This document shows positions 1 to 34,559 of a DNA stretch of 64,000 nt, one piece after another. Position 1 is the first letter of the stretch. The number at the start of each line of letters is the position of its first letter. Below the pieces are notes generated by a model, which had not been told where the DNA came from, ran no database searches, and was given only the letters and a program-made list of their open reading frames with translations. The position numbers and the translations under genes were made by a program. Source of the stretch: Leidyana gryllorum EB-2025a (lineage: Eukaryota > Protista > Apicomplexa); contig JBLWGC010000216.1 in NCBI GenBank assembly GCA_048772705.1, positions 124,001-188,000 on the forward strand, read 5' to 3'.

Positions 1-446
1 TAACAGCCAGGCCAACTTCAAGCATGGAAGCAGACAGGTCCTCCGAGCCAGCAATAAACTTACGGATCCAGCGATCAATGACAACCATCTAAAGAGAATT
101 TCGACCCGCTTCATGACCGATTGCTCACCATTGCGTTAAAGTCTTCATTTCGTTGAGTGAGATTATTTGGATCTTCCTGGAACCGGCGCTGGATCTGGCG
201 GTAAAGCGGTTCGATAGAAGCCAGTTCGCGCCACTTTTTGGACAACGTTTCCTGACACACAAAGGTCAGAGCAGGCTTGGGAAGGTATGACATGATGTCG
301 TGTGTGAGGTCCAGATCGCGGTGCATGGCAGTCAAGATCCAGTTGGACAGATATTCTTGGGTCGTCAGGTGGCAGTCATTGGCTGCTACGGGGTTGAAAA
401 GGGTGGCAAAAAGCCAGATTGCACAAGTTAGAAGTCCGCGGAACAT
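1..446 (-). CDS. hypothetical, probably secreted protein (3' part runs off window start)
   Basis: ATG at 446 gives MFRGLLTCAIWLFATLFNPVAA, a signal-peptide-like start. A probable donor ATG|GTGAGC near 128 suggests the gene splices onward. Confidence 0.4.
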
Positions 447-511
447 TGCACACACGTTCGCAGATCTGGTTACAAGGAGACGTGACGCAAGCACGAGTAG
501 GATGTAGTATA

Positions 512-994
512 TTACTGATCTTCGTTGTGAACCATGTTGGGGATACCATGCAAAATGGGATACTCATGATTACATTTAGGGCATTTCAATGACCCTTCCA
601 GTATATGCAACTCAATCAACGCTTTGTGCACTGCTTTCAGAATAGTTTCGTCCTCCATGTCTTGATCGGTGAGGTCATTTGGGACAGCGAGTTCGAACTG
701 CAGGGGATGGTTTAGTAGATTAGAAGCAGCGTTTTACCTTGGCGGCGGCTTGGACGAAGGCTTCCCATTCCAATCTCTCTCTGATATGTTTCAAGAAATT
801 TGGTTTGAGCTCTGCTTCGATCATGTCATGCGATTTAAGGTCTGTGCCTTCGAGCTGGGCCAGCTCCTCAGGAGTGGCCAACTTAATATCCAGAGGGAAT
901 CCGCCACATCCCTTCTTATTGCTGGAGTTGGGTAACATTAATATCTCATTGACGATCCCTACCACTGCATCACATTGTGGGTTATGAGTCGCAT
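512..994 (-). CDS. TRM112: Trm112 methyltransferase activator, 133 aa, 3 exons (963-994, 738-921, 512-697)
   Basis: Splicing GT-AG introns 922-962 and 698-737 gives MRLITHNVMQCNKKGCGGFPL...LEWEAFVQAA...LIELHILEGSLKCPKCNHEYPILHGIPNM, which matches the Trm112 N- and C-terminal signatures. The ORF track misses exons 1 and 3. Confidence 0.93.
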
Positions 995-1004
995 GGCTGA
1001 AATT

Positions 1005-4000
1005 TCAGAATTTTGGACTGTCTAAAGTTAATCCGTCAGTGGCAGAGAGTTTGGCTCCTTCCAAAGCTTCTTCCAGGAGGCGTTTGCGTTCCACGGCCAG
1101 AGCATCTTGAACAAAAGCACTGTCTTCCATAACTGTTTTGACTGCGTCTTGGACAACCAGGAAGTCGCCCTTGATGACTTCCCAGACAGCCTGCATCATT
1201 GAATGTGTTGTGAAAGATTTGGACTGAGTGCTTACTCTAAGATCGAAGCCATATTCAAAGAGTGTGACGCCGACCATGGCTTCGTAGAAGTCTGCGATAC
1301 ATTTATATTTGTTGTAGGAGACCTTCGGGTCGACAAAGTCGGGGAACCCTTCTGTACCGCCAGTCAGCTGAGGCAGACGAGCGACTTCCTCGTCTTCGTC
1401 GTCGTAGGTGCCCATATCAGGCTGCTTGATTCCCCACTTCTCCTCCTGCTCATCAATGATCTCTTGTTTACAGCGATCGAAATCCTCGGCGGGTGGAACG
1501 TGAGTGAGTCTCAGTTGTAACTGATCGAGATCCAGCCACCGTTTATCTCTGGGACCGCCCTCGTAGAACATGAGGGCACTCGCTTTGATTCTGCTTCTGT
1601 CTTTACGGTTGCCGAGCAGCTTGCGAAGCATTACACGAGTCAGATACCGATTTGACTGTAAAATGCCCCTCACAACGGACAGATGTCCCTCACGGGCGTC
1701 CGGGAAGCTCTTGTTGAGCCACTCGGTCATCAGCAAGGCGAGTGCCGCATCTCCGAGATACTCTAAGCGTTGGTAGTCTCCCCAGGGCAGCTCGTCAAAG
1801 TATTTCCGAGCGCTCGGCTCGACGCGAGCTTCGGACAGCAGGCTGTAAACATCATCCCTCACTGACGTTTTCCCCGCGATCGGCGCAAACCAGGCCCTCA
1901 ACACCTTCGCGTTTGACTCGCGTGGCGCTTGATGAGTGCTGAGTAGGTAGTGGTCTAACCTCCATTTCAAAGAGCGATCAAAGTCATATCCCATCACAGG
2001 CGTCTCGGCTACGGCTGGGAAATATTTCGCCAGCGCGTCGCTCGTCCTCTCATCGAACGGTTTGAAAGAGAATTTGGGAACCGATTGAGCCACCGGATAC
2101 TCTTCTCTATGGGGCGTAGAGAGATCTTCAATCTCAACACCGGGGTTTTTAATAACCTCGAGTTGCAGCGTGTCGTGTGATGTTCCCCGAGGGTTCCTCA
2201 ACCGGTTGGTGTACCCAGCGGACTGGTCATAAATGGTCGGTGCGCTCTGAGAGTATGTGGCTTTGACCTGACTCTGATATGCCTTCGGTTGCATCGCCCC
2301 CTAACGAGTTGGAACGATCAATGTAAATACACAACGCAAAGACCAGAGGTCGTCTTACCAGAAGAGTAATGTCTCGCAGAGCGCTGAAAATCGACACCAT
2401 CGAGGTTTGATTTGGCGAATGTGTCTGCAGCACCACAGAGTCTATGAACAGAGCTGCAGCGTAGACTCCTGCAGGACTTCCGCACCACTCCGGGTGAAGA
2501 ACATATGGCATACAAAATGTCCTAAAGTCCTCAAGATCAAAGGTTGACCCGCCACTATCAGCCATGGCACTCATCGCCTCTCGCAGCAACATATGCATTG
2601 ACATTGATGGCCACATATCAACACTGAAGAGTTTGGGAAAATGTTGCGGTCGGCCTATTCGCGCGCTCACCGATGATAGTGACTCCAATAGATAGCGCCG
2701 ATAAGCGATTCGACTATATCAGCCTGCTGTTTGTCTCCGACTTCTTGTACTCGCATATCAGCCAGTGTTCCGAACCCCTTTCTTGTTGATCGTGGGTTGA
2801 AGGGACGATTCAACATGTACGCGTGCAACCGATAAGTTCTGGCACCCGCCCGTAGAGCCGAGTTGGCTTTGATGGTGTCCGCTTGTTGGGTCATTGCACC
2901 TTCAGTCGCCTCCGGCAGCGCAAAGAAGGACCACACAGTTGCTGCATATTTGAGCACACTATCTCCCAAGAACTCGAGAACCTGATTATGTGGGAACCGC
3001 AGCATACAGGGAGGGAAGTATTGCGGTAACAGTCCGGGCGACGGGAGTAAGACGTGTCGTTGGTCGTCTTCCTCTGGAATTCTGCGCACGAAGGCCTTGC
3101 GCCGTTTGGCCTCTTCTGGGGAGTGCTCCAAGGCAGCCATCAGGGACAGATAAGAGCGGAAGGCCTCCTCGTCATCCTTTCGGACCCAAAACATCCCTTC
3201 CGGCGTTGGGGTTGGAGAAGATCTGTCCAGGAAAAGATCAGCGATGTTATTGCGCTTCTTCATCACTTCCGTCTGGTAGTCCAAACCTCCTCCTGAAGCC
3301 GAGCTGCAGGTGACTGCCGGTTGCACAACGTCAGGATAGACATTGAAGCTCGGCTCTGTCGATACCGTCATACTCAACTCGGCGTCTTTAGCCGTCTGAA
3401 CAGTCCAACGCAAAGCCGAGACAGCCTCTGAGGATTTGGGGCTCAGTAGCTTCATGACCGGTGTACATTGGTTGAAAGCGTGACGCAAAAGAGCTGCCAA
3501 CTCTCGCTGCTTCAATTTGACATCCATTGTCCAATACATAGCCGGTGAGAATGTCCACTGAGACAACATTGTTTCAGGGAAGGGTAGCACACGTGCGAAC
3601 TGCGGAGCGTGCCAGGGGTGGTTGCGTTCGTAGCTGTCCTCAAAGAAGCACACACGGGTGCCTTGACGGGTATTATAGCCCATGACGCAAAAGGTGGTAT
3701 CTGGTTCGACGACGCGCTCAAACTGAGTTTCGTACCATTGACACAGTGTCATCTCCTCTTTCTCGGCATAGCGGGCCTCCGGTCCGTTCTCCCAATCGAA
3801 GCCTCCCAGTCGATAGTAACGGAAAGCTCGGGACTTTTCATAGCCCAATCTCAAACACGGAGCTTCACCTCCGCGGGACAAAGTGTGGGCTACAACAGCT
3901 AAAGCCATTCTTCTGACTTGAGCCTCTTCTCTGTGGATTGGCTCTCCTCGATAATTCTCATCGAGACAACATTTCCATCGACGTCTCGATTCCGCCTTCT

Positions 4001-7000
4001 CAACTCCGTACACAAAGGTGAGTTCGGGTTTGCCGGGCCAGATGGCTTTCCCATCAACTGGACGGCGGGGGTATCGCCACAGACACACCGAAGGTTTCAG
4101 TCCATCAATTCTCAGGAAATCGACATCGTTCAATCGCTCCTTATCCTCAGCCACCAATCTGTCGAGTACGAAGCTGATTGGATCTTCGCGTGGAGGCAGA
4201 GGTTTCTGATAGCAGAACTGGTTGTCCTGTTGGCGTTCGGCATCGGTTCTGTGGCTATGGGCGCAGGCAAAGTTTGACAGCCCCAGCGGTTCCGGTCTGA
4301 CTTGGCCTCGTTCGTTCCAGCAGTCTCCAATGGACTCTGCCCCGAGGGCGGGATCAACTTGGTCGGGGGCCAACCACCCGACCAAAGTTGGCTCGGCGCG
4401 ATATATCTCACTGATAGTGGGAGGAGCTCTGTTTCGGATATTCTCCACTTCTGCTGCAGTGTATTGCGCTCTTTCATTTCCTGACCGCATGAAGGCAGCA
4501 AGCCGCAGGAACCGATAGATCCACTCGAGATCTAAGGTCACTCCATCGGCTTTGAGCGGTGCCTGACAGCAGAAGATGGGTGTCAGTAAATCCTTATTGG
4601 CGTGGGCACTGGTGAGTATTTCGTGCAAAGTCTTCTCGATGACCGACTCGAAAGATTGATGCTGATTGGTGGTGGGGTTTGACTCCTCGTCTTCAGGTTT
4701 TTGAGTAGTGGCAGCTTCCATGGGAACGAGTACTTTGCCGCCCGGCAAGTTGAACGTTCTGATGGACAGGAATCGATTCATCGCGCTGCTGTACCGAAGC
4801 AAAGTGGTCATAACGGGTGCTGTGACCTGAATGGCTATCGGAGAGTCAACGTCGGCGAATCTACTCGTATCGCGGTGACGACTCTCTCCAGGAGACACAG
4901 ACCGGAACGCGGCGTCCATTGCTTCATCGATCTTTGGACAGCTCTGAAACTCGGACCATTGAGACGCGGCCAACTGTCCAACTGTGATGGCTTTGACAGT
5001 CACATGCACGGGCTCGCCGGTGACCCAATGTTTGAAAGAGTACTGCAGAGGCTCGACGAGCGGAGATTGCAACAATACCGTACACGGCTGCAACACTGTC
5101 AGTGGGTCAGCGTCTTCCACCAACCGAAGGCCGGGGAATGCACAGCATCCCGGCCTCCCCTCAGCAGCGCGTTGCTCCATAAGTTTATGAATGTGTTTCC
5201 CGTACGCTTTGGCTCTCAGTCTGCGACTGTAGACATTGCGCTCCTGATCTCTGAGCCGTTTAATCTCCTCCGGATTGAACTTTGTAGCCGCCCTCTCCCC
5301 GTCTTCCCCCTCCGGCGCGGGCTCTGCGGCTGCGGCCTCAGCTTCCCCGGGGCCGTCGTCCGAGTCGTTGTCAACGGTGAGCAACACCCCCGGCCAGTAA
5401 TCTTCTGGGGCAAAGACTCCGCCCGCTTCTGCAATGTATTGTACCATTGCATCAGGGGGCTGACAGGGAGAGTTGGGATTGTGATGGAGACGCCAGAACC
5501 CAAACAATCCACCCGCCTTGAGTACCTCTGAGTCCCAACGCTCAACCCTCATGTAAACGTGGTGTGGGTACAACACTCTGACCAGCTCCTGATCCGGAGC
5601 TTTCGCCTCTTCGTCCCTCAAAAACGTCTTGCGACGGTTGTCGGGTTCACTACGTATGTCTTCGAGTCGCACTCCATTCGGCAGCCATAGCTTCGAACTG
5701 TTCTTCACCACCTCGACCTCCTCTCTACGCGCAGTGAGCGGGTTCGACATGTAGAATACGTCTGTCTTGGCCAGTTGAATGGCGCTCGGCAACTCCACCG
5801 TCTCAGTCTCCGGGTCCACAAAGTAATCTCCCCGACACACCACCTCGATTTGAGAGCTGCTTGCAGCTGCAGTCTTGGAGAAGTATCTATGGATTGGGGG
5901 TAAAAGTGGCAGTGGACTTTCTCGGAAAAGAGTGTCATGTGGGCCCTGAACCCCTCCTCGGACCTTCTGGCTAGTCAAAGCATAATGGGGGAGGGGGCCG
6001 GGCGGCGGGAGATAGTGATCGTCGAGAACATTGAACTGCGAACAATACAGTGGTTCGAATTTGGGCCCAAAATGAACTTACCTTTTGGAGCTCGGTGAGG
6101 ATACGCCCTGCCAGGACGTTTCTCGCAAAGTTACGATCTGAGAAATTGTCGTGGAGGGAAACAGTGGTTGAGAACGGGTACGAAGGGCCATCTTCGCGCG
6201 ATCTGTGGCCATATATTGGTGGCAGACTGACACGAATCTCGTTTCTGTTCCACCCCAGATTCTGTCGGATCAATCAATTTTTGTCCAATAAGAGTAATTG
6301 AGCGACACCCAATCTTACCGAGAAATAAGAGGTCGATCCTCTGGCCTTGAGGTATCGGCGGAGCTCAAATTCGCAAGCGAACCCTTCTTCGTTCTTATGC
6401 TGGAGGAGTTGGTCCATCACTGACTGCAGAGTCGCCATAGCTCTGTTCCACGGTATGAGAGCTCCCGACTTTTCGTTGTACAAAGCCAAACTGCGGGCCT
6501 CCGCAATGCTTTTCGGAGGGACCGCGGCGAGCTGATTCTGTGCCTCCTTCTGCCGACGCAGCTCTTTCTCTCTGAGCTGTTCACAGGTTTTCAGAACCAG
6601 TTGCTCCAGCCGCTCAAAGCCAACCAGGGCAGCCACAGGCGCATAGTTACACCGCAAACTCAGCAAATAAAACTTGGAGTTACTCTGTCGTGCGCGACCT
6701 CGACTTTGGAGGAATTGGGCGAGGGTCTGCGGCAGATCGAATCTGACCACAGCGTTACAGGCCGGGAGATCAAACCCTTCCTCTATAATGGAGGTCGCAG
6801 TGATAGTTTGTAGGGAGCCGTGATCTTCGAATCTCGACGTGAACAACCGTAAACGATTGCGTTGCTCATTAATGTTGATCGTGGGTAATGCGCCATCGAG
6901 ATGTTTCTCTCTGCGTATGGAGGTATCGGTCAATTCCTGGCCGTGGGCCTGCGAGGCACCGCCTATACCACAGACCCAACTGGTTTTCGAGGCAAATCGC

Positions 7001-10000
7001 GATGATAAATAATCCGCCAACAGCTTGCATTTCAGTCGAGTAGTGCAAAAGACAATGCACTTTGATTTGATCGACATCAAAGTGTCGTCGTGGGCCGTCT
7101 CGAGATCTGACCACGTGTAATTCCACGTGATCGTCACTCGTTTGTCGGCCAACGAGTTTTCCAATTTGACCATATTAGCAGCTCTTTGACGCTCCTCCCG
7201 TTTCAAACTTCCTTCATCGTCCGACGACAGCGCCTCTCCATGCCTCCCACTTCGGAACACACGTTTGGATCCCGCACTGCCGGAGTCTTTGAGTCGCCGA
7301 TCCCGTACCCGTCGTGGGGAAGACGATACACTGTCAGATGAATACGATCGTCTTCGTGAGCCGTCTGGCGTCTTGGCTGAATACCGGCGGCGACTCCGGC
7401 GCGCCTCCTCTGGGGATGACTCGGATGACGATGAGAGTGACCTTGAAGACTCCGTCCGACTGCCGCTGCTCTCTGATTCAGAACTGTATCTACTCCGACG
7501 CGGGGCTCTGTATTTTCTACCATTAGGGCGATCTCGACTCCGTGGGCGACGACGCCGCGGGTCGGAATCGCTGTCGGAAGACTCCCCCGAGCTGTGTGCC
7601 TTTCTGTTGCTTCGACGCATCCACTCGGGATTATCGACTCCGTCACTATCATCACTAACGTCGTCCACGAATACTTCAACAGGTTTTGCTTCAAATTCGT
7701 CTCCATCGGAATCGGGATCCTGTGAGCTTTCTGTTCCTACAAACTCGTCGTGCAGGTCACCCAAAGTCTCTGTATCTGCGTCATCAATCTCAAGTGGCTG
7801 ATGCTGCATATGAGACTGTTGTCCACTCATCTGATCGAGAGGGCCGAGTCGCTGAGCAAAGCGTTCGTGCATTTGCAGTCTGTCCGTATAGCCTTCCATT
7901 TTCACGTCCTGGACTTCCTGGCCCTTATAGGTTTGCCAAACAATGAGGCGGATGAGCTCCTCAGTCGTTTGCGTCTTGCGCGAGACTAAGTGTCTCACGT
8001 CTTTGTCCAGAGGCGGGGTTCTTCCCTCGCCCGAGACGGGATCGTCAAAGAGGATACTGGAAGGAGGCACCTCGAGCACCTTGATCAAGTTGTCGACCAA
8101 ACTTGGATGACGATAGAGCAGACTCTGGTAGAGCAGCAGGGCAACCCACCGCTGACTCGATTTGATTAGTTGCATGCAGAGCTTCATCAACAGCGGTAGA
8201 GATTCGATCAGACTCAGAAGATTACTCTCACTCAGATAGTCGTCATCCAGATCACGCACATCGGGATCGGCCAGAAGTCCTCTCAGCTTGCGCTGCTGAG
8301 ATATTGATGTCACCTCTTCACACATAGCCAACATTTCCAACAAGCAGCGTTTTCGCTTATCCGGATTTTCGACCAAATCGGCAAGTTGTAGCAGTAATTG
8401 ACGATTGTTCCGATCGGCGGCTGTCTTTTCCACGTCCACCAGCGGGTCGAGCTTCAGCAGATCCAGAATTTCATTCACTGACTGAACTCCGCTCTTCGTT
8501 TGATATTTGGCTTTGTCCCTGTTGCGGTTTCTGACAGCTTTGTTCAACAGGATCACTCGATATCGAATCTGTTCTGTGAGATCCCTTTCCTGGATGATCA
8601 TGTTTCTCAACAAATCCTTCTGGCCATGTGACGCGCCCGATAACAATATACGTCGCTTCGGAAGCTCCTTGATCTCCTCTACTGAATCAAAACGCTCCAC
8701 AAGAATGGCCTGCGCCAGTTTAGTCCCTCCGTAACACGCTGTCACGTGATCCGCGATCTTATCCACCATCTCTTCCGCATAGTGACCATACAGATTCGAC
8801 ATCGTTGGAATCCACCAACTCAACAATAAACGATGCAAACCCCAGAAACCAATGTCTTGAATCACTTCGTTAAATCGATCACTCCAACCTCCCCACTGCA
8901 TCAGGTCATCGTCCTCAGCATTCTGCATGGCTGCCTCTATCCGAGCGTCCGTCCCGGCTCGCCCATCATCGACCGTAATCAATTCTTCATTGATCTTTTT
9001 GATGGAGTGTCGCAGTGTCTGACGTATTCGCTCCTTCAGCTCCTGTCTCCTCCGCTCGTACAGTGCCTTTTCCACAGCCGCTTGAGCCTTTCGATTCACG
9101 TGCTCCTGGATCTGCTCCATTGCCGCCATTTTCTTACTCTTAGGGGCCGCTGCCTCTCGAACAGTCACGGTTTCTCCATGATTTGCACCATGTTGCTCAT
9201 CACCACTGCCATTCTTTCCATCGGTTTGAGCCCCGCTGCTCTCATTCCCTTCGGCCACTGTGGAATAATCATCAGTCGGTCTGGGAGAAACACTTGGCGA
9301 GAAGTCCATCGGTTCATCTGGGTCCTCCTGATCTCGCGCGCTCTCGTCCTGTGTGGTGGTTTTGTTCGGAAGACCTTGAGTCTCGTCTTCATCACATTCC
9401 TTCGCCTTCCCAGCGTCGCCTGTCAACCCAGTTTCAGGGGACTTGGAGGCGATAAGTTCAACCAGGTCAGGTGGGGGAGTACTCTGCCTTCGGGCCGTCG
9501 CCTTTTGCATTTTAGAGATGTGCAGTAAATTCAGCAGCCGCTTCGCTACACCGTTGATCTCCTCCAACGTTATGAGAATCTGCTGATACGCTCTCACTCG
9601 AGCTATCGCTTGCTGGACTTCCGCCCCGACGACAGTTAACTCGTCCTTATCCTTGAAAATCAGGTCGTATAGGGGGTCCCGTTCAATTTCCCGCTCTAAA
9701 ATTGAATGACATTGCAGCACCTCCGAACGGGCTTGGGACTTGTTGACGAACGGCTTGTGCGTTGGACGGAATCGCCTTTCTTGGTGAATCGCCTCGGGAA
9801 GGACCCAGTGAGCTTGAATCAACATTTTGATAGGCATCACAACCGTCCATTCTATTAAAGCACTCCATGTTCGTTGTGTCGGATAGGGCCGATAAACAAT
9901 TGGATGTTGTTGAGGCCGATTCCGTTCCCAACAACAGCTGGCGGGATCATTGACATTGACCGTACCGATGTTGACCGTCGCATCGTATAATAAACACATT

Positions 10001-10950
10001 CTTTTCAACTCTTCTTCCACCTCCCAAGCGACGGTACTGCTCTGGTTGGCTTCAGCATAGCGTGTGTCCACACTATGTGCGATCGGAGACGCAGTGAGGC
10101 CCAAGATCCGAGGTCGTATGAGTTCTGTGGCATCGTTAGCTTGCGCGTGATAATAGGCAGCCTTATGATAGAATTCTTGCGCAATGACAGCATATGGAGC
10201 GTCCGCCGAACAGTGGTGACACTCGTCAAAGATCAGGAGAGAGATGTCTTCAATTTTAATCATGGCGTGTTGTAGATAGACGAGCATTTTATCGGGGGGC
10301 ATGACAAAAAGTCGCGGCCACACTGGCAGCGAAACACCTTGTTCAGATTCCTGATCGGCGAAATCGTACTCATCAAAACCACGAGTGTCGTCCATAGCTT
10401 CGATGACAGCCTTCTTAACCTCTTCATCCTCGAGCAACTTCTGACGGAACGGAAGTATGGTATTGAGCTCCACCCCAGTCGTCGCAGTGGTCAACGCCTG
10501 GTCAACTTTTTGTTTGTAGACCTTCAAATCTGCCCAGTACTCTTGCCAGGTATCGAGCCGATTCCAGCTCACGTCCAAGTCAACGTCCGCTGTTCCCATA
10601 CTCCCAGCGAAGCATCTCAGGATGTCCTTGGCGTCCTGGGGTTCATATATCCACGCACCTCCCCCTTTCTCCAACTTGCTGGGGTTTGGGTGTTGAAAGT
10701 GGACACCTCCCGCTTCTTGCAAATCTGAGAAGATACTTTTGGCCTGCTGGGTTGATAATACAACCGTGGGAGCCAGGAAAACCACGCATTTATCCAGATA
10801 TTGTGGCAATGACAAGTAGTGTTGCGTCAATAATGAAGCTATGTGGGTCTTGCCCGAGTTGGTTGGCAGAATTGCTATAACATTCCTTTCCTTGGCCTCA
10901 TCGAACACAACTTTCTGATAATCTCTGACCTCCTTCTTCGACCTTTGCAT
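1005..10950 (-). CDS. DCR: Dicer-like RNase III (DExH helicase - DUF283 - PAZ-like - RNase IIIa - RNase IIIb), ~3,230 aa; exons 6319-10950, 6082-6261, 2671-6035, 2359-2623, 1236-2300, 1005-1190
   Basis: Helicase motifs PTNSGKT, DECHH, LGLTAS, IVFCTTR, TSIIEEGFD and QSRGRAR; DUF283-like end LDDHYLP; RNase III signatures NQVLEFLGDSVL/ADIVESLIGA and YQRLEYLGDAAL/ADFYEAMVG. Five GT-AG introns of 45-58 nt (6262-6318, 6036-6081, 2624-2670, 2301-2358, 1191-1235) join the ORFs in frame. Confidence 0.92.
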
Positions 10951-11139
10951 CTCCCCCACTCAAAAAACCCCGAAAAGTCTACCATTGTAGTCGTCGTCTT
11001 GACAGACAGCGCGCAGCCGACCTCCACTCACCGGGTTCAACCGAGATTCCGAATCCCAAGTGTATTCATGGCCAGATACGCCTGTGGGGTCCAGCAGAAC
11101 GATGAGTCAAAAAATCGCAATTAGCAGCCGGCTCGATCG

Positions 11140-11604
11140 ATGGCCTGGGACACCTTTCTACGTAAGCTCTTCAAATTGCAGCCAACCCCCGCACCGGAAT
11201 GCCCAATATATCGCATGATTTGCTCGTTACGGGATCACTTGGCGGCCTTTGTTCAGGCTGAGTACGATAGCCATTGTGCCGACTATGCGATGGGCGAGGA
11301 AGAACGGCGTGGTGCTCAGTCTAATCCATACACGATGGACAATGTGAACATTCTGATTTCACTAATCGAGGATTTCGCCGACAACCTGCGTGGGAAGCTG
11401 ACGCCTATGAGTATTGAAGAAGTGCGAGAAGCAATTCATCGTCTGGTGAACGATCTGAATACTTTTCACTGTATGAACTTCGCCTTGTGGTCAAGTGAAT
11501 CGGTGCAGATTTGCCACATCATCTTAGCTGTGACTGACAAAACAGGGTTCAGTCGTCACGAGGCAAGCCTTATTATACAAGATAACTGTGCATTTAATTG
11601 GTGA
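11140..11604 (+). CDS. small acidic helical protein, array paralogue 1 (divergent)
   Basis: Intronless 154 aa ORF with the family motif NPYTMDNVNILISLIEDF...VREAIHRLVNDLN...IC..I; ends in W. Confidence 0.75.
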   Translation: MAWDTFLRKLFKLQPTPAPECPIYRMICSLRDHLAAFVQAEYDSHCADYAMGEEERRGAQSNPYTMDNVNILISLIEDFADNLRGKLTPMSIEEVREAIHRLVNDLNTFHCMNFALWSSESVQICHIILAVTDKTGFSRHEASLIIQDNCAFNW

Positions 11605-11791
11605 CTGGGGTTTCTATTGGCAAATTCGCACAACAGAAGACTGCGCCAAGTCTTTGTTATCAGTGGATTTAGTTACCTTTCTATTAAAAGTTGGCATTTT
11701 TAGTCACATCGCAGATTAGCAGAAACGGTTGGCCAAGACAAGTGTGTACTGGGTGCGAGCTTGCTTTCAAAAGCGAGTTAGTCTGGTGGTA

Positions 11792-12268
11792 ATGACTTGG
11801 GACGTTGCAGTTCAAAGGCTGTTCGGGGTCAATCCAAAGCCGACTGCGCAGCACGAGTCAATTGATATATCCGACCTCGACTCATTGATTCTCACGTTTG
11901 AGAATTCGTTGGCAGAACGCAAGAATTTGCTGTACGAAGAATACGTTGATGACTGTGAAATTGATGGTCAAGCTCCGGACGATGATCATCCCTATACAGC
12001 TGCTAATGTGGGGGTCTTCATGAATACGTTGTACAAGTTTCTGGAGAAGTTGGCCAACGGGATCGTTACTAAAGAGTCTGAATTGAAGCAGGAAATCAAC
12101 GAATTGATCAGTGATGTCTGCGTTATCCAATGCAAAGCTTTTGAATTAAGCATGACCCAAACAGAAGCCTTGGAAGCGGTGGTAAAGGCTGCTGCCGATA
12201 TGGTGATAACGAATGGAAGGATTCTAGCTACAGAAGTATTGAAGGACAACAATTTCTGGCAGTGGTAA
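11792..12268 (+). CDS. array paralogue 2 (divergent)
   Basis: ATG at 11792 gives MTWDVAVQRLFG, similar to paralogue 1 (MAWDTFLRKLF). Contains HPYTAANV...F; ends DNNFWQW. Confidence 0.75.
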   Translation: MTWDVAVQRLFGVNPKPTAQHESIDISDLDSLILTFENSLAERKNLLYEEYVDDCEIDGQAPDDDHPYTAANVGVFMNTLYKFLEKLANGIVTKESELKQEINELISDVCVIQCKAFELSMTQTEALEAVVKAAADMVITNGRILATEVLKDNNFWQW

Positions 12269-12412
12269 TCGCTTTTAGGGTCGTAGTTAAAGATACGAAC
12301 ATTGAAGCAGCGTCACGAGGGATTATAGAGATAAACTGACCAACTCGGGATAGGACACGTGGAGACAGCTCGCACCACACGATTCGCACCACACGACTTG
12401 TACCGCGCTGAG

Positions 12413-13018
12413 ATGGGAAGTTCACACTCACGAAGCAAGTGGCGCTATAGAAAACCATCGGACGTGCCCGCATGGGTCAAAGAATCCCCAGTACCTATTC
12501 TGATATTCAACCTTGGTATTCAAATACACAATATTGCCGAATCCAGGCTTGATGAACTCCTGGAAAAGGCGAAAGCCCGCAACACGCCAGAGACAGAGAT
12601 CGACCATCCCTATACCAAAGAGAAACTTCAGAAGCTGATAGACATAATGCAAGAATTTTACTATGGGATGAGTTGGGAAGACAAGAAACATGCTCACAAA
12701 GGTACACTGTTGCGAGAGTCAAGTTCGAAGGTGGCAAGATGGACGCACTCAGCATTCGCCTTGCCGATGACGACAATTGACTTAATCCTTGACATCTTCA
12801 TGACCACAGCCAAAGAAGCAGGATTGGATGTGGTGGACTCCTTCCTTGCGGTTGCGACCGGCGGCATCGAAGCCTGGGAGAAGTTGCCACACTACGCCGA
12901 CTTACGTGAGGGAGCAGTCCTCTTTGGTAATAGGCGGGTATTGCCACCCAGGTGCCCGCCGATTACCAACGAAATGTACGCGGACGTTTTGCGCAAAAAA
13001 TATGTCTGGCGAAGCTGA
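12413..13018 (+). CDS. array paralogue 3, N-myristoylation-like start and C-terminal extension
   Basis: Starts MGSSHSRSKWRYRK; contains DHPYTKEKLQKLIDIMQEFY and A..AGL motifs. Confidence 0.65.
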   Translation: MGSSHSRSKWRYRKPSDVPAWVKESPVPILIFNLGIQIHNIAESRLDELLEKAKARNTPETEIDHPYTKEKLQKLIDIMQEFYYGMSWEDKKHAHKGTLLRESSSKVARWTHSAFALPMTTIDLILDIFMTTAKEAGLDVVDSFLAVATGGIEAWEKLPHYADLREGAVLFGNRRVLPPRCPPITNEMYADVLRKKYVWRS

Positions 13019-13430
13019 TGTCCGGAAAGAGGGTACCGGATCTGTTCGATCCGCACAAGAGCGGATTTCATCTTTCCGTGACCAACTTCTGAGATATATT
13101 GATGTCTGTGCGGAGTATGAGCCGGACGCTGCACCACCATACGCAACTGAAGATATCGATACACTCGTACTCTTGCTCCAGAACTTTCTGACTCGACTGC
13201 ATGAGAGCCGGTCAGTAGTTGAGAGTCTTGAGCGGACGAAGAGTCGAATCGAGGCTGAGGTGAAGACCCTCGTGTTGAAGATCAATGACTTTGATTCCAC
13301 TCGTTACCAATTGGAAACGAATGAAGCAGAGGCCATTTGTGATATAGTGTCTAGTGCTGTTGTCGAAGCGGGATACGAATTCGATGATACGGACACTGGT
13401 GACTTGACGGAACCTTGGCGTACTTGGTGA
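13002..13430 (+). CDS. array paralogue 4
   Basis: ATG at 13002 (MSGEADV). PPYATEDIDTLVLLLQNF...EVKTLVLKIN...LETNEAEAICDIV...AGYEFDD...DLTEPWRTW. Confidence 0.8.
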   Translation: MSGEADVRKEGTGSVRSAQERISSFRDQLLRYIDVCAEYEPDAAPPYATEDIDTLVLLLQNFLTRLHESRSVVESLERTKSRIEAEVKTLVLKINDFDSTRYQLETNEAEAICDIVSSAVVEAGYEFDDTDTGDLTEPWRTW

Positions 13431-13577
13431 AAATTGTTTTGAGGCGCGACGCCCGCACACAGATCAGATCAGTGTACATCTTTTTGTAGATTTCTTACTC
13501 ATTCCATTTTGTGTGTTTGGTTCATCACCACATTGCGCGCTACCGAGTCAAATCACTAGTGTTAAGGTTACTCTACA

Positions 13578-13781
13578 ATGCGTTTCACTGCTCTCTTTGC
13601 CTGTTTCCTGGTCGCCGCGGCTACCGAGACTAACACCAAGTCTCTGATCCACTCGCGCCTGAGTGTTCAGCACCCCCTTGACGAAGTCGACATTCGCGCC
13701 CAACAAGACGCTAACCATGAAGCTGCCCGTCAAGCACTAAACGAATATTATCTCCGTCACGGCCGCTCTAGGAAGCTCTGA
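13578..13781 (+). CDS. small secreted peptide (67 aa)
   Basis: MRFTALFACFLVAAA is signal-peptide-like and is followed by a ~50 aa peptide with a basic tail (RHGRSRKL). Confidence 0.5.
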   Translation: MRFTALFACFLVAAATETNTKSLIHSRLSVQHPLDEVDIRAQQDANHEAARQALNEYYLRHGRSRKL

Positions 13782-14015
13782 GTTGATCTATTATGAAAGG
13801 AAGGTCTGTGTATGTGCTGTGTCGTCAACAATGCCACCAAAGGTCATCAAAGTCCTCCATGTGAAGGACTCGTGAATGTGACTTTTCACATGCTTTTTGT
13901 GTAAAACGCCTATGCGCCAACTATTGTTCGCCAAACTCGTTATTGACAGCTTCCGAGTGTGTGGCTAAGAGATGGCACCAAAGCACTAATTTCTGTTATT
14001 TTCAAAAAACAACCA

Positions 14016-14435
14016 ATGGCTCGACATAATCCGCTGACGCCTCAACTGGCAGAGTTGCGCCGTATGCTGGAAGTCTATCGGGAGATCTGTTTGAGTAATA
14101 GGTGTCGTGTTTCCCAAGAGGGGCCGTCCACGCTGGGTAACAAGACCGGTGAACCTTACTCTTTAGCGGACATTGCCGACTTGATTGGTCAGTTGGAAAG
14201 CTATTACCGCCGACTGCGTGGTGACCGTACCGCGACCTGGACCAAGGCACAGATCCGGCAGGAGGTGAAGAGAATAGTGATGAAAATGAATGAGATCTGT
14301 GAGGAAAAGGGTATGATAGAGACGGGAGAGCGGGACGTTATTTGTCAGTTCATTAATGACGCGGCGGTTCTGGCGGGTTACACCTTCGAGCGAGGCGAGA
14401 TCACAGATCTGACGGAAGAGTGGAGGGATTTTTGA
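14016..14435 (+). CDS. array paralogue 5
   Basis: ATG at 14016. EPYSLADIADLIGQLESYY...IRQEVKRIVMKMN...MIETGERDVICQFI...AGYTFERGEITDLTEEWRDF. Confidence 0.82.
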   Translation: MARHNPLTPQLAELRRMLEVYREICLSNRCRVSQEGPSTLGNKTGEPYSLADIADLIGQLESYYRRLRGDRTATWTKAQIRQEVKRIVMKMNEICEEKGMIETGERDVICQFINDAAVLAGYTFERGEITDLTEEWRDF

Positions 14436-14478
14436 TTTACCCCAAAAAAGAATAGTTGATTCTGGGGGCTGTTGAGAA

Positions 14479-14865
14479 ATGGGAGAAACCGACCCGGTTC
14501 CAGGCCTCATTGAGAGCTTAAAAGAGACGATGCAAGAATACAGAGAGAGGTGTATGGAGGATCGCGACCAACTGGAGAACAAGTATACAGTGGAAGAGAT
14601 AGACAAGTTCATCGATACCATGAGACAGTATCACGAAGTTCTCGGTGGGAACAGAGCTAAGAAGCTCAGCGACAACGAGATTAGAGGGCATATCAAGGAA
14701 TGGGTCGTCGCGGTCAATAAATTCGCCGAGGAGGACAGGTGTATGATTGAAACAGAAGAGCGGGAGGCAGTGAGTGACATTATATACCAATCAGCCCTAC
14801 TGGCCGGATACCGATTGGATGAGGAGGGTTTTTACGAAATGACTCGGCCCTGGAGAGAATTTTGA
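14479..14865 (+). CDS. array paralogue 6
   Basis: KYTVEEIDKFIDTM...MIETEEREAVSDII...LAGYRLDE...MTRPWREF. Confidence 0.82.
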   Translation: MGETDPVPGLIESLKETMQEYRERCMEDRDQLENKYTVEEIDKFIDTMRQYHEVLGGNRAKKLSDNEIRGHIKEWVVAVNKFAEEDRCMIETEEREAVSDIIYQSALLAGYRLDEEGFYEMTRPWREF

Positions 14866-15007
14866 CATTTGGGTTCATTGATCGAAGTATAATTGACAAT
14901 GACTCCAAATAAGAAAGTGGAAGATCTTCTTCCATAGCAGCAGCGGCAGCAGCAGCAGCAGCACACACTTGATCTATGTTTCTGGCAAAAAATAGGTCAT
15001 TGGTGCG

Positions 15008-15364
15008 ATGGCAAAGAATGAATTGTCACTTGGGGATCTGCGACAAACTTTGGAGGAGTATAGGGCTGAATGGATTGAGGAAGGCGGCAGGCAGCGAGGG
15101 GATGTGGAAGAGCCCTTCACTCTCGCCGACATCGACAATGTGATGACTCTTTTGGGAAACTTGACACGAGAGCGTAGAGCGAATTGTTCCGCAACCTTCA
15201 CTTCACAAGCGATAAGGGCGTATCTCGTAGAAGCGGTTTTTGAGTGGTCTGACAATGCTGCGGATGCTGAATATGTGATCGAGACTGAAGAATTTGAAGC
15301 AATCTGCAAAATGGTTCACGAAACAGCCCATTGGTTGGGCGAAAACCGAGTATCTACAACTTGA
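15008..15364 (+). CDS. array paralogue 7, C-terminally truncated (possible decaying copy)
   Basis: EPFTLADIDNVMTLL...VIETEEFEAICKMV is present, but the terminal WRx[FW] motif is missing. Confidence 0.65.
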   Translation: MAKNELSLGDLRQTLEEYRAEWIEEGGRQRGDVEEPFTLADIDNVMTLLGNLTRERRANCSATFTSQAIRAYLVEAVFEWSDNAADAEYVIETEEFEAICKMVHETAHWLGENRVSTT

Positions 15365-15626
15365 GATAAAATCGGCTTAAATGAGTCGCTACTACATCAT
15401 TGTGCAACACAAACTTAAATGACGACGCCGCCGCTGCCGCCATAGTCAGGCTCAAAAGAGAGACATCTCAAGGCCGACTGGCAGCAGCAGAACGGACGTT
15501 AAACAGCTGTAGAATTTTCATTTGATCCAACAACAATCCTCTGACAGTTCAGCAATGTTAATTCAGGAGGAGATGTTGTGTCTATTTCTGATACCAAAAG
15601 TGGGGACGACACTTTGGTGGCCTAAG

Positions 15627-15673
15627 GACAAAGTCAGGCGGTGACAAAGTCATGCGGTGACAAAGTCATGCGG
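15627..15673. repeat. 3 x 16-bp tandem repeat GACAAAGTCA(G/T)GCGG(T)
   Basis: Read directly: copies at 15627, 15643 and 15659, in the gap upstream of paralogue 8. Confidence 0.85.
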
Positions 15674-15878
15674 ACTGGCAGTGTCGGTATAATCACAGTA
15701 ATCCACTCATAGCGTTCGCCATACCGAGACGACGCAGATAGACAACAAGCAGATGCAACAAGCAGATGCAATCTCCACATCGTACCCCACCACGACCACC
15801 AAAGAGGACAGTAACGATGTTCTAATCAAATGTCCGTTGCCTTTGAGTGACAAAGCAGTAAAAAAAACTGCTATCGCC

Positions 15879-16268
15879 ATGGGAGATATGACACGTCATC
15901 CAAGACCCATTCCCAAGCTGCAAAAAGAGCTGCGCGATTGTATCGAGAGCTATCGCAAAGGCTTCATAGACGACAATCGTCCTGAGCCATACTCAGTCGC
16001 CGATATTGAACGTCTCATGGCCCTTCTGGACTCATTTTACCGTTCGATGTGCCAAGATCGGACCTCTCCTCTGACCAAAGCGCAGATTCGACAGGAGGTG
16101 GAGGACGTGATTGTGAAAATCAATCTCATTGCTGACGAGACCTGTATGATAGAGACGGGAGAGCGCGAGGCCATATGCGAAATCGTACAGACGATTGCGA
16201 TATCGGCCGGATATACGTTCGACGAAGGCGAATGCCCCGACATTACGGAAGAATGGAGAGACTTTTGA
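15879..16268 (+). CDS. array paralogue 8 (closest to paralogue 5)
   Basis: ATG at 15879 (alternative 15753). EPYSVADIERLMALLDSFY...TKAQIRQEVEDVIVKIN...MIETGEREAICEIV...AGYTFDEGECPDITEEWRDF. Confidence 0.82.
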   Translation: MGDMTRHPRPIPKLQKELRDCIESYRKGFIDDNRPEPYSVADIERLMALLDSFYRSMCQDRTSPLTKAQIRQEVEDVIVKINLIADETCMIETGEREAICEIVQTIAISAGYTFDEGECPDITEEWRDF

Positions 16269-16503: not shown

Positions 16504-19500
16504 TTAAAACACCATCACTCCGCCAGCCAACAATGTCGTCGCTGTCAAAGCCATCAGAGAATGCTTCAATACAGATTGAGAACCACACGTTGAAGTACGC
16601 CATAAAACTGCACATCGATCCGCAGTCTGGCATCCCATCTCGTAATTGGGGTTCAAACACCAAAAACATCCAGGCTCTGCTGAACAAGCGCCGCACGTTC
16701 GCTTCAGAGAACACTGGGGGGAAACTAATCCCGAATCAGTTGACATCAAATCACTCGTCAACATGGACGACATACTGTACGACGGGGTCACAAATCCTGA
16801 ATAATTGCCTTCCGGCGTGAAATGCTCGTCCAAACTCAATGTCGTTAATAGGGTACTGCCTTTGTAATAACTTGAACTTGACGTCTCCCAATCGCTACTC
16901 GTAATCGTCGCGTTACTCCACATTGTTGTCGTACCAGTGAGCCATACCGTCTCACTGCCGCCGTAATCCTCACTCAACGTCATCTCCTCGCTCCTGCTTG
17001 TGAACACACTCGACATACTCACTGTCCAACTTCCCATTGGCATCGATGTAGTCTCCTCACTGAAATCGTCAGTCTCTGTCGTCATACCCTCACTACTTGT
17101 CGACTCTTCCCAGATGGTGACCTCTGTGGTGTCCGTTGCTGATGTTCTTGGCTCCTCAGGCCCTGTCATGGACGCCTCAGTCGCGGTCGTGGGCTCCTCA
17201 CTCGTCTCAGTGGGCTCCTCAAGGGTGGTCGGCAGCTCTTCAGACATCGTCGTCGGCTCCTCCGTATTGGTGGTCTCTGTTGTCTCATCGGTCACCGTCA
17301 CTGTCGTCGGCTCCTCCGTGGCCACCTCTGTTGTCTCTTCAGCTACTGTCGTCAACTTCTCGGTATTGATCTCTGTTGTCTCTTCAGTTGACGACGCCGG
17401 CTCTTCGGTGGAGCGCGTAAACTCCTCAGTGGTCGTCGTGGGTTCCTCATTTGTGGTGGTGGGCTCTTCGGAGGGCGTCGAAGGTTCTTCGGTCCCAGTC
17501 GTAGGCTCCTCGGTGGTCGTGGTAGGTTCCTCAGTCGTAGTCGTAGGCTCCTCGGAGGTCATCGAGGGTTCCTCGGTAGTCGTTGTGAACTCCTCAGTCC
17601 CAGTCGTAGGCTCCTCAGTCGTTGTGGTGGGCTCTTCAGTCGCGGTCGTGGGCTCCTCAGTCGTAGTCGTGGGCTCCTCGGTGGTCGTTGTGGGCTCCTC
17701 AGTGGTGGTCGTCGAGGGTTCCTCGGTAGTCGTTGTGGACTCCTCAGTCCCAGTCGTGGGCTCCTCAGTCATTGTGGTGGGCTCCTCAGTCGCAGTCGTG
17801 GTCGTAGGCTCCTCGGAGGTCATCGAGGGTTCCTCGGTAGTCGTTGTGAACTCCTCAGTCCCAGTCGTAGGCTCCTCAGTCGTTGTGGTGGGCTCTTCAG
17901 TCGCGGTCGTGGGCTCCTCAGTCGTAGTCGTGGGCTCCTCGGTGGTCGTTGTGGGCTCCTCAGTGGTGGTCGTCGAGGGTTCCTCGGTAGTCGTTGTGGA
18001 CTCCTCAGTCCCAGTTGTGGGCTCTTCAGTCACGGTCGTGGGCTCCTCAGTCGTAGTCGTGGGCTCCTCGGTGGTCGTGGTAGGTTCCTCAGTCGTAGTC
18101 GTGGGCTCCTCGGTGGTCGTTGTGGGCTCCTCAGTCGTTGTGGTGGGCTCCTCAGTCGCAGTCGTGGGCTCTTCGGGGGTCGTCGAGGGTTCTTCGGTAG
18201 TCGTTGTGGACTCCTCAGTCCCATTCGTGGACTCCTCGGTCGCAGTGGTGGACTCCTCAGTCGCAGTGGTGGGCTCCTCAGTCGCAGTCGTGGTCGTAGG
18301 CTCCTCGGAGGTCATCGAGGGTTCCTCGGTAGTCGTTGTGAACTCCTCAGTCCCAGTCGTAGGCTCCTCAGTCGTTGTGGTGGGCTCTTCAGTCACGGTC
18401 GTGGGCTCCTCAGTCGTAGTCGTGGGCTCCTCGGTGGTCGTGGTAGGTTCCTCAGTCGTAGTCGTGGGCTCCTCGGTGGTCGTTGTGGGCTCCTCAGTGG
18501 TGGTCGTCGAGGGTTCCTCGGTAGTCGTTGTGGACTCCTCAGTCCCAGTCGTGGGCTCCTCAGTCATTGTGGTGGGCTCCTCGGTGGTCGTGGTAGGTTC
18601 CTCAGTCGTAGTCGTGGGCTCCTCAGTGGTGCTCGTCGGCTCTTCTGTCGTTGTCGTGAGCTCCTCGGTGGTCGTAGTGGGCTCCTCAGTGGTCGTCGGC
18701 TCCTCAGTGGTAGTAGTGGGCTCCTCAGTGGTCGTCGGCTCCTCAGTGGTGGTCGTCGGCTCTTCTGTTGTTGGCGTGAGCTCCTTGGTGGTCGTGGGCG
18801 CCTCAGTCGTCGTGGTGGGTTCTTCAGTCGTCGTAGTGGGTACTTCAGTCGTAGTCGTGGGCTCCTCAGTGGTCGTAGTGGGCTCTTCATTGGTAGTTGT
18901 GGGCTCCTCAGTGGTGGTCGTCGGCTCTTCTGTTGTTGTCGTGAGCTCCCCGGTGGTCGTGGGCGCCTCAGTCGTCGTGGTGGGTTCTTCAGTCGTCGTA
19001 GTGGGTACGTCAGTCGTAGTCGTGGGCTCCTCAGTCGTCGTGGTGGGCTCCTCAGTGGTCGTTGGCGCCTCAGTGGTCGTTGTGGGTTCTTCGGTCGTCG
19101 TGGTGGGTTCTTCAGTCGTCGTGGTGGGCTCCTCGGTGGTCGTCGTGGGTTCCTCGGTGGTGGTCGTCGGCTCCTCAGTGGTCGTTGGCGCCTCAGTGGT
19201 CGTAGTGGGCTCCTCAGTGGTCCTCGTGGGCTCTTCGGTGGTCGTCAGCGCCTCAGTCGTCGTGGTGGGCTCCTCAGTCGTCGTGGTGGGCTCCTCAGTG
19301 GTCGTTGGCGCTTCAGTCGTCGTGGTGGGCTCCTCAGTCGTCGTGGTGGGCTCCTCGGTGGTCGTTGGCGCCTCAGTGGTCGTTGTGGGTTCTTCGGTCG
19401 TCGTGGTGGGCTCTTCGGTGGTCGTCGTGGGCTCCTCGGTGGTCGTCGGCGCCTCAGTCGTCGTGGTGGGTTCTGTAGTGGTCGTCGTCGGCTCCTCAGT

Positions 19501-34551: not shown

Positions 34552-34559
<8 letters not shown>
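32929..34559 (+). CDS. pseudokinase, tandem paralogue of the preceding kinase (start unresolved)
   Basis: YLVKL, FLRELI, LIGW, HQNIQTDQ (no catalytic Asp), DLEG, IAPE, DIWDL and RLRPNS, with intron positions similar to the upstream kinase. Confidence 0.65.

What the first reader, a model, noticed from the sequence alone, without database searches (positions are those of the whole stretch)
1005..10950. Giant, apparently complete Dicer in an apicomplexan
Seen: hand-splicing yields ~3,230 aa with all helicase motifs, a DUF283-like domain, and two RNase III domains whose catalytic acidic residues (E..GD and D..E) are intact. No C-terminal dsRBD is evident. Established: Plasmodium, piroplasms and Cryptosporidium lack Dicer/RNAi, and Toxoplasma has a divergent one. 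A working RNAi pathway in this lineage would bear on the ancestral state and could offer a genetic tool. ORF-level annotation would split this gene into several fragments.
Basis: partly seen in the sequence, partly recalled or inferred. Interest (0 to 1): 0.8.

Follow-up and report, generated by a model that had tools for sequence, protein, structure and literature searches.

The report
Giant full-architecture Dicer of a gregarine-like apicomplexan
This is a real, intact 3,230-residue Dicer gene in a gregarine-like relative of the malaria parasite, sitting in a genome that also encodes Argonautes and an RNA-dependent RNA polymerase, so this lineage probably kept the RNA-interference machinery that malaria parasites lost.

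Summary
Observation confirmed. Helicase motifs I, Ia, II, III, IV, V and VI are intact. Both RNase III domains keep the E..D / D..E acidic residues. No dsRBD is detected.

New here: Pfam sees no PAZ, but an AlphaFold model of exon 3 has the human Dicer platform-PAZ-connector cassette as best match among 48,161 PDB representatives (Z 14.7, 244 of 276 residues). Argonaute and Piwi PAZ domains match residues about 515-827. The DUF283-like claim has indirect support only.

The closest relatives are single-ORF, transcript-derived proteins of the gregarines Gregarina sp. Poly1 (3,276 aa) and Blabericola migrator (2,993 aa), at about 30-42% identity and collinear exon by exon. Next come Ancora, Cardiosporidium, Porospora, Eimeria and Vitrella.

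The same genome encodes two PAZ+PIWI Argonautes (one checked: D, D, H conserved, E637 aligned to D), a weaker third PIWI match, and one RdRP with DLDGD.

No RNA run was listed, so expression and splicing are untested. The scan's other first-stage notes on this genome record the same gene and toolkit.

Verdict: a new member of a known kind, and a moderately interesting one.

The parts
1005..10950 (-). Whole Dicer gene: ATG 10950 to stop TGA 1007-1005; 6 exons, 5 introns, 3,230 aa
6319..10950 (-). Exon 1 (1,544 codons): DExD/H helicase. Motif I NSGKT 10846-10860, Ia 10765-10779, II DECHH 10213-10227, III LTASP 10084-10098, IV 7036-7053, V 6763-6783, VI QSRGRAR 6688-6708. The tail starts the DUF283-like region.
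7054..10083 (-). Insertion of about 1,010 aa between helicase motifs III and IV (the Hel2i position), partly conserved in gregarine orthologues. It includes an RS-rich low-complexity stretch at about 7290-7500.
6262..6318 (-). Intron 1, 57 nt, GTAAGA..CAG, phase 0
   Evidence: pieces tile on orthologues
6082..6261 (-). Exon 2 (60 codons): core of the DUF283-like, dsRBD-fold region (LPPxxGHR ... LA...L)
6036..6081 (-). Intron 2, 46 nt, GTAAGT..CAG
   Evidence: exon 2 end and exon 3 start abut without a gap on P0001/P0002
2671..6035 (-). Exon 3 (1,121 codons + 2 nt): end of the DUF283-like helix (FNVLDDHYLPP), platform, PAZ, connector helix, RNase IIIa
4494..5579 (-). Platform-like part of the cassette (exon 3 aa ~153-514), with large low-confidence insertions
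   Evidence: model 153..839 aligned to human Dicer 756..1053
3555..4493 (-). PAZ-fold domain (exon 3 aa ~515-827), invisible to Pfam
   Evidence: 1si2_A PAZ Z 8.7, 101 of 120 aligned; 6kr6_A Piwi PAZ Z 8.7; cassette Z 14.7
2688..2987 (-). RNase IIIa domain; catalytic E/D in LEFLGD (2961-2978) and D/E in QQADIVESLIGA (2694-2729)
   Evidence: (these residues invariant in 10 sequences)
2624..2670 (-). Intron 3, 47 nt, GTGAGC..CAG; splits a codon (phase 2)
   Evidence: exon 3 ends at P0001 residue 2761 and exon 4 starts at 2763
2359..2623 (-). Exon 4 (1 nt + 88 codons): C-terminal extension of RNase IIIa
2301..2358 (-). Intron 4, 58 nt, GTAAGA..TAG. This is the only junction lying in a non-conserved stretch.
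1236..2300 (-). Exon 5 (355 codons): linker plus RNase IIIb with an internal insertion of about 70-100 aa; LEYLGD 1749-1766, IADFYEAMVG 1269-1298
1191..1235 (-). Intron 5, 45 nt, in frame, GTAAGC..CAG
   Evidence: 15-aa gap against P0001; DNA; exon 5/6 abut at P0001 3216/3217 and P0002 2929/2930
1008..1190 (-). Exon 6 (61 codons): short C-terminal tail, no dsRBD

Best explanation
The gene encodes the only RNase III enzyme detected in this gregarine-like apicomplexan genome. It is a 3,230-aa Dicer with the full eukaryotic layout: DExD/H helicase, DUF283-like dsRBD fold, platform, PAZ, connector helix, RNase IIIa and RNase IIIb, but no C-terminal dsRBD. Every module is stretched by lineage-specific insertions. 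Inferred mechanism: long dsRNA, made at least in part by the genome's single RdRP, is engaged either by the ATP-competent helicase or, through its 3' overhang end, by the platform-PAZ cassette. The two RNase III domains form an intramolecular pseudo-dimer, and each cuts one strand at a distance fixed by the connector. The resulting small duplexes with 2-nt 3' overhangs load into the two PAZ+PIWI Argonautes, which silence transposon, viral or endogenous transcripts. Shown here: the gene structure, the motifs, the fold-level domain assignment, and the presence of the partner genes. Inferred: expression, catalysis, product size and biological targets.
For: Pfam finds helicase and two RNase III domains. 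All helicase motifs and all eight catalytic acidic residues are intact, and the RNase IIIa residues are invariant across 10 relatives. The exon 3 model's best match among 48,161 PDB representatives is the human Dicer platform-PAZ-connector cassette (Z 14.7, rmsd 3.7, 244 of 276 aligned). Argonaute and Piwi PAZ domains also match (Z 8.7), and whole Dicers align over about 380 residues. The orthologous DUF283 region folds as alpha-beta-beta-beta-alpha, with mouse Dicer 614-713 as its top match (Z 6.8). Collinear single-ORF, transcript-derived orthologues of 3,276 and 2,993 aa exist. The genome holds two PAZ+PIWI genes, a weaker third PIWI match, and an RdRP with DLDGD. This gene carries the only RNase III hits in the genome.
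Against: There is no expression or small-RNA evidence, because no sequencing run was listed. The exon 3 model is of low overall confidence (mean pLDDT 52.8, 10-sequence alignment). Pfam PAZ, Dicer_dimer and dsrm models all fail on the window's exons. The DUF283 evidence is sub-threshold (E 7e-4 at 20 bits below cut-off, E 0.47, Z 6.8) and comes from an orthologue, not from the window's own joined sequence. The hAgo2 glutamate finger E637 aligns to Asp in the Argonaute checked. In Toxoplasma, the same toolkit has not given reliable experimental RNAi (PMC2877743).
Confidence: 0.85

Rival explanations
1. The enzyme is a Dicer by architecture, but its main job is housekeeping RNA processing (pre-rRNA, snoRNA or structured hairpin precursors, as for Rnt1 or Drosha) rather than dsRNA-triggered silencing. 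This need not exclude an RNAi role.
For: It is the only RNase III gene found in the genome, so any RNase III-dependent housekeeping step would fall to it. An RS-rich stretch in the helicase insertion recalls nuclear RNA-processing factors. In PDB sequence searches the RNase III domains score best against Drosha.
Against: It has a helicase, a PAZ cassette and no dsRBD, unlike Drosha or Rnt1. The genome keeps Argonautes and an RdRP, which make sense only with a small-RNA producer. Many eukaryotes manage without a dedicated Rnt1-type enzyme (general knowledge).
Confidence: 0.1
2. The helicase part and the RNase III part are two separate genes, and the splice model is an artefact.
For: No RNA data exist for this organism. 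The junction of exons 4 and 5 lies in a non-conserved stretch.
Against: Transcript-derived orthologues carry helicase and both RNase III domains in one ORF. The window's pieces tile on them in order, with junctions abutting to the residue. All five introns have GTRAG..YAG ends and sizes of 45-58 nt. No stop or plausible start separates the parts once spliced.
Confidence: 0.03
3. The gene is an inactive relic, or the contig is contamination from a host or another eukaryote.
For: RNAi has been lost repeatedly in Apicomplexa (PMC2699523).
Against: There are 3,230 codons without a stop, and every catalytic and ATP-binding motif is intact. The best relatives of both the Dicer and a neighbouring ATPase are gregarines and other apicomplexans. 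The partner genes are intact in the same assembly.
Confidence: 0.02

Closest known systems
Gregarine Dicer orthologues: Gregarina sp. Poly1 EP01054_P003725 (3,276 aa) and Blabericola migrator EP01053_P000494 (2,993 aa), from EukProt transcriptomes
   Same: Collinear over the whole length. Same Pfam picture: DEAD/ResIII, Helicase_C and 2x Ribonuclease_3, with no PAZ or dsrm. Same giant helicase insertion, RNase IIIb insertion and short tail.
   Different: Only 26-42% identical by segment. The source paper (PMC8051059) never mentions Dicer or RNAi. Those species also have a shorter second RNase III paralogue (P0006, P0008), which was not found in this genome.
Toxoplasma gondii Tg-Dicer (Braun et al. 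2010, PMC2877743)
   Same: An apicomplexan Dicer with a helicase and two RNase III domains, without sequence-recognisable PAZ or dsRBD. It is accompanied by an Argonaute and an RdRP.
   Different: Tg-Dicer itself was not compared here; a coccidian relative (Eimeria magna, P0012) matched only in the RNase III domains. Here a PAZ fold is predicted at structure level. Tg-AGO lacks the slicer residues, whereas the one Argonaute checked here keeps D, D and H.
Human and animal Dicer (PDB 5zak, 7yym, 4ngb), Drosophila Dcr-2, plant DCLs
   Same: Same domain order from helicase to RNase IIIb. About 380 residues of exon 3 superpose on human Dicer 765-1576, and the cassette on 756-1053.
   Different: About 1,300 more residues than human Dicer. 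No C-terminal dsRBD. About 1,000 aa between helicase motifs III and IV. The cassette spans 687 aa against 298. Sequence identity is 9-16% outside the RNase III signature.
Drosha (class 2 RNase III)
   Same: Two RNase III domains, with the best PDB sequence scores; an RS-rich region.
   Different: Drosha has no helicase and no PAZ, and it ends in a dsRBD. This protein has a helicase and a PAZ cassette and lacks the dsRBD.

Membership tests
Dicer (eukaryotic class 3 RNase III) | Two tandem RNase III domains in one polypeptide | tested here: met
   PF00636 at 57.9 and 41.3 bits in exons 3 and 5; both lie in one spliced frame
Dicer (eukaryotic class 3 RNase III) | Catalytic acidic residues (E, D ... 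D, E) in both RNase III domains | tested here: met
   LEFLGD/ADIVES and LEYLGD/ADFYEA; the IIIa residues are invariant in alignment A1
Dicer (eukaryotic class 3 RNase III) | N-terminal DExD/H (RIG-I-like) helicase with ATP-binding motifs | tested here: met
   DEAD, ResIII and Helicase_C; motifs I-VI located
Dicer (eukaryotic class 3 RNase III) | DUF283 / Dicer dimerisation domain (dsRBD-like fold) after the helicase | tested here: inconclusive
   No Pfam hit on the window's exons. Weak Dicer_dimer hits in relatives P0007 (E 7e-4, 20 bits, below cut-off) and P0003. A profile hits only AncD1D2 at E 0.47. The orthologue model's top match is mouse Dicer 614-713 at Z 6.8. The window's pieces tile on that region. 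The joined window sequence was not searched.
Dicer (eukaryotic class 3 RNase III) | PAZ domain recognisable by sequence (Pfam PF02170) | tested here: not met
   No PAZ hit in any exon or in the orthologues. The genome's only PAZ hits are in the Argonautes.
Dicer (eukaryotic class 3 RNase III) | Platform-PAZ-connector cassette at fold level, N-terminal to RNase IIIa | tested here: met
   AF2 model of exon 3: 4ngb_A ranks 1 of 48,161, Z 14.7, 244 of 276 aligned; Argonaute/Piwi PAZ domains Z 8.7. Caveat: mean pLDDT 52.8.
Dicer (eukaryotic class 3 RNase III) | C-terminal dsRBD (present in animal and plant Dicers; absent in Giardia and, by sequence, in Toxoplasma) | tested here: not met
   No dsrm in the gene. 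Only about 60 aa follow RNase IIIb. No dsrm hit genome-wide.
Dicer (eukaryotic class 3 RNase III) | Cuts dsRNA into ~20-26 nt duplexes with 2-nt 3' overhangs | not testable with these tools
   No sequencing run listed
Drosha (class 2 RNase III) | No helicase; two RNase III domains followed by a dsRBD | tested here: not met
   Helicase present, dsRBD absent

The most novel reading that the evidence does not exclude
Gregarines, and by inference the apicomplexan ancestor, kept the complete ancestral Dicer (helicase, DUF283, platform-PAZ, two RNase III domains) together with slicer-type Argonautes and an RdRP. That would be the most complete RNAi pathway in the phylum. The 'PAZ-less' description of myzozoan Dicers would then be an artefact of sequence divergence. 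The conserved insertion of about 1,000 aa in the helicase, with its RS-rich part, would be a lineage-specific functional module, for instance one coupling dicing to nuclear RNA processing.
Probability: 0.3. Interest if true: 0.6.

Novelty: new member of a known kind. Interest (0 to 1): 0.45.

Why it matters
The textbook picture of Apicomplexa is that RNAi is absent (Plasmodium, Cryptosporidium, piroplasms) or odd (Toxoplasma: no recognisable PAZ in Dicer, no slicer residues in Argonaute).

A gregarine-like genome has an intact helicase-PAZ Dicer, Argonautes (slicer-type residues checked in one) and an RdRP. Like-sized orthologues occur in other gregarines, and relatives in Cardiosporidium, Porospora, Eimeria and Vitrella. 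Together these point to a full pathway in the common ancestor followed by several independent losses.

Practically, it suggests dsRNA-based knock-down might work in gregarines, which have no genetic tools.

It also shows that fold-level searches can recover a PAZ cassette that sequence models miss, which calls for re-examining other 'PAZ-less' protist Dicers. I found no paper in the held library reporting gregarine Dicer or RNAi.

Tried and rejected
- Sequencing runs: the look-up of sequencing runs on 1000-6999 listed none, so read laying was not used and the introns have no RNA support.
- Word search: the search with exon 3 found nothing, because of length limits and divergence. The exhaustive search was then justified.
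- Pfam: PAZ, Dicer_dimer and dsrm models gave nothing on the window's exons, even at E up to 10. Six-frame genome scans for dsrm and Dicer_dimer were also empty.
- DUF283 model: Foldseek gave no significant match. Only the exhaustive aligner did, and only at modest Z.
- Extra in-frame introns: candidates at 10572-10498 and 4411-4337 were rejected, because those residues align as conserved coding sequence in P0001 and P0002.
- Every search was exon by exon, by reference. As a result, the DUF283 region, which spans two introns, could not be tested on the window's own sequence.
- Species: the species name was not determined.
Full report

Yes. The region holds five long minus-strand ORFs: 6274-10959, 5971-6273, 2667-5978, 2227-2688 and 1005-2294. 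Pfam places the domains as follows:
- DEAD/ResIII at the start of the first ORF and Helicase_C at its end.
- One Ribonuclease_3 domain at the end of the third ORF (57.9 bits).
- One Ribonuclease_3 domain, with an internal insertion, in the fifth ORF (41.3 bits).

Reading the DNA at the frame changes gives four introns with GTRAG donors and YAG acceptors:
- 6318-6262 (57 nt)
- 6081-6036 (46 nt)
- 2670-2624 (47 nt, splitting a codon)
- 2358-2301 (58 nt)

A fifth, in-frame intron at 1235-1191 (45 nt, GTAAGC..CAG) showed up as a 15-residue gap against the closest orthologue, and the DNA confirms it.

Exon phases are consistent. Two further in-frame GT..AG candidates were rejected, because their residues align as conserved coding sequence in the orthologues.

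**2. Motifs**

- Helicase: NSGKT (I), FLAPT (Ia), DECHH (II), LTASP (III), VFCTTR (IV), EEGFDLP (V), QSRGRAR (VI).
- RNase IIIa: LEFLGD and QQADIVESLIGA.
- RNase IIIb: LEYLGD and IADFYEAMVG.

The four acidic positions of each RNase III domain are therefore intact. Those of IIIa are invariant in a 10-sequence alignment. About 60 residues follow RNase IIIb, and no dsrm domain is detected there or anywhere in the genome.

**3. Whose gene is it?**

The window is contig C216 of a 15.5-Mb, 237-contig assembly.

The word-index search with exon 3 found nothing. The exhaustive search found 118 relatives. The named ones are:
- Gregarina sp. Poly1, 3,276 aa, E 5.7e-132
- Blabericola migrator, 2,993 aa, E 3.2e-123
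- a 2,586-aa transcript-derived ORF (GHVP01033380)
- Ancora sagittata
- Cardiosporidium cionae, annotated 'ribonuclease type III Dicer, partial'
- Porospora cf. gigantea B, annotated hypothetical
- Eimeria magna
- the chromerid Vitrella brassicaformis

A P-type ATPase elsewhere in the window (36092-38215) gives the same picture: Gregarina sp. Poly1 51%, Porospora 50%, Eimeria 46%, Plasmodium 42%.

The organism is therefore an apicomplexan of gregarine affinity. No relative in the libraries is closer than about 50% identity, even for a conserved pump. I did not determine the species.

**4. One gene or two?**

No RNA run could be listed, so the splice model lacks direct support. Indirect support is good:
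- The two gregarine orthologues are single ORFs predicted from transcripts and carry the helicase plus both RNase III domains.
- The window's exons map onto them in order:

| Exon | P0001 residues | P0002 residues |
|---|---|---|
| 1 | 8-1534 | 7-1355 |
| 3 | 1811-2761 | 1417-2482 |
| 4 | 2763-2850 | 2485-2567 |
| 5 | 2979-3216 | 2689-2929 |
| 6 | 3217-3265 | 2930-2959 |

- The exon 3/4 and 5/6 junctions therefore abut to the residue.
- Exon 2, together with the tail of exon 1 and the head of exon 3, tiles without gaps over the orthologous segment.
- Only the exon 4/5 junction lies in a non-conserved stretch.

**5. Hidden domains**

Pfam finds no PAZ, Dicer_dimer or dsrm in the window or in any apicomplexan or chromerid relative examined. 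This is the same picture that led Braun et al. to describe Tg-Dicer as lacking PAZ and dsRBD (PMC2877743).

*Platform-PAZ-connector.* I folded exon 3 with a 10-sequence alignment. The model has mean pLDDT 52.8 and pTM 0.58, with confident blocks at 150-200, 310-360, 400-420, 490-560, 700-850 and 1015-1120.
- All 19 Foldseek matches with E up to 0.001 are Dicers.
- In an exhaustive alignment against 48,161 PDB representatives, rank 1 is the human Dicer platform-PAZ-connector cassette: 4ngb_A, Z 14.7, rmsd 3.7 A, 244 of 276 residues, model 153-839 against chain 756-1053.
- Stand-alone PAZ domains of human Ago1 (1si2_A, Z 8.7, 101 of 120 aligned), Drosophila Piwi and several prokaryotic Argonautes match model residues 515/537 to about 820.
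- Whole Dicers superpose over about 380 residues, model 151-1121 against human 764-1576.
- The cassette matches persist when low-confidence stretches are trimmed.

I conclude that a platform-PAZ-connector cassette lies at window 3519-5579, stretched to 687 residues by insertions. This rests on a prediction, not an experiment.

*DUF283.* This region spans two introns.
- Pfam Dicer_dimer gives sub-threshold hits to the last helix in two relatives (E 7e-4 at 20 bits, and E 0.0047).
- A small profile hits only the ancestral Dicer helicase-DUF283 construct, at E 0.47.
- The AF2 model of Blabericola residues 1300-1440 (pLDDT 66.8) is alpha-(alpha)-beta-beta-beta-alpha. Its best matches among 48,161 chains are mouse Dicer 614-713 (Z 6.8, 91 aligned), the ancestral Dicer 538-641 and Dcr-2 558-664, followed by dsRBDs.
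- Foldseek alone found nothing.

**6. The rest of the pathway**

Six-frame Pfam scans of the assembly gave:
- Two genes with both PAZ and Piwi on contig C121, and a weaker third Piwi match on C43.
- One RdRP gene on C185, at 286 bits, with the catalytic DLDGD motif.
- No RNase III domain other than the two in this gene.

Aligned to human Ago2, one Argonaute keeps D597, D669 and H807. An Asp sits at or next to E637.

**7. Mechanism**

The mechanism given under Best explanation is inferred from the domain set and from what is established for Dicers with helicase and PAZ. None of it was measured here.

With no dsRBD and no detectable dsRBD protein in the genome, dsRNA handling presumably rests on the helicase and the DUF283-like fold.

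The main rival is a housekeeping RNA-processing role, since this is the only RNase III found. That role is not exclusive of RNAi.

**8. Comparison and novelty**

The protein meets the defining features of Dicer except a sequence-recognisable PAZ (met at fold level only) and the C-terminal dsRBD, which is not universal. It is not Drosha-like, because it has a helicase and a PAZ and lacks a dsRBD.

It belongs to a clade of giant gregarine Dicers whose members are public but uncharacterised:
- The paper that produced the two best orthologues never mentions Dicer or RNAi.
- No paper in the held library pairs Porospora or Gregarina niphandrodes with a report of Dicer.
- The papers that pair 'gregarine' with Dicer and Argonaute are about insects or other organisms.

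The statements that Plasmodium, Cryptosporidium and Theileria lack the machinery and that Toxoplasma has a divergent one are borne out (PMC2699523, PMC2877743).

I rate it a new member of a known kind, with two modestly new points: a full toolkit with slicer-type Argonaute in a gregarine-like genome, and a PAZ cassette that sequence models miss.

**9. Earlier notes of this scan**

Other first-stage notes on the same genome describe the same Dicer, its helicase insertion, the RNase IIIb insertion, a 'cryptic PAZ' at 3530-3830, two Argonautes, a slicer-dead PIWI-type protein and the RdRP. My tests agree with them. The 'cryptic PAZ' note overlaps the C-terminal part of the PAZ fold and the connector that I map at 3555-4493 and just downstream.

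Noticed in passing
window 34483-38218 (+) and 41103-43854 (-): Two P-type cation ATPase genes of the ENA/ATP4-like kind in opposite orientation. The best named hits of the first are gregarine, Porospora, Eimeria and Plasmodium pumps at 42-51% identity. The ORFs are split, so these genes have introns too.
   Followed up: partly
window 16504-24417 (-): An uninterrupted 2,637-aa ORF with no Pfam match at E 0.001. A 1,031-aa ORF lies on the opposite strand inside it (17000-20095).
   Followed up: no
window 7290-7500 (-), inside the helicase insertion: An Arg/Ser-rich low-complexity stretch resembling SR-protein RS domains. It is only loosely conserved in Gregarina sp. Poly1, and its role is unexplained.
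   Followed up: partly
whole genome G000: No Pfam dsrm (PF00035) match anywhere in a six-frame scan, so no obvious dsRBD partner protein for a Dicer that itself lacks a dsRBD. The scan is loose and intron-blind, so absence is not proven.
   Followed up: partly
P0006 (Gregarina sp. Poly1, 772 aa) and P0008 (Blabericola migrator, 928 aa): Both gregarines have a second, shorter protein matching the platform-like block and the RNase III region but no helicase. It may be a paralogue or a partial transcript. No counterpart was detected in this genome.
   Followed up: no
window 24456-25382 (-) and 54531-59948 (+): Ordinary eukaryotic genes: a gamma-tubulin complex component C-terminal domain and a THADA/TRM732-like protein.
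   Followed up: no
window 11140-16268 (+), head-to-head with the Dicer start: A run of short ORFs that another first-stage note calls an array of paralogues sharing a 189-bp divergent promoter with the Dicer. Not examined here.
   Followed up: no
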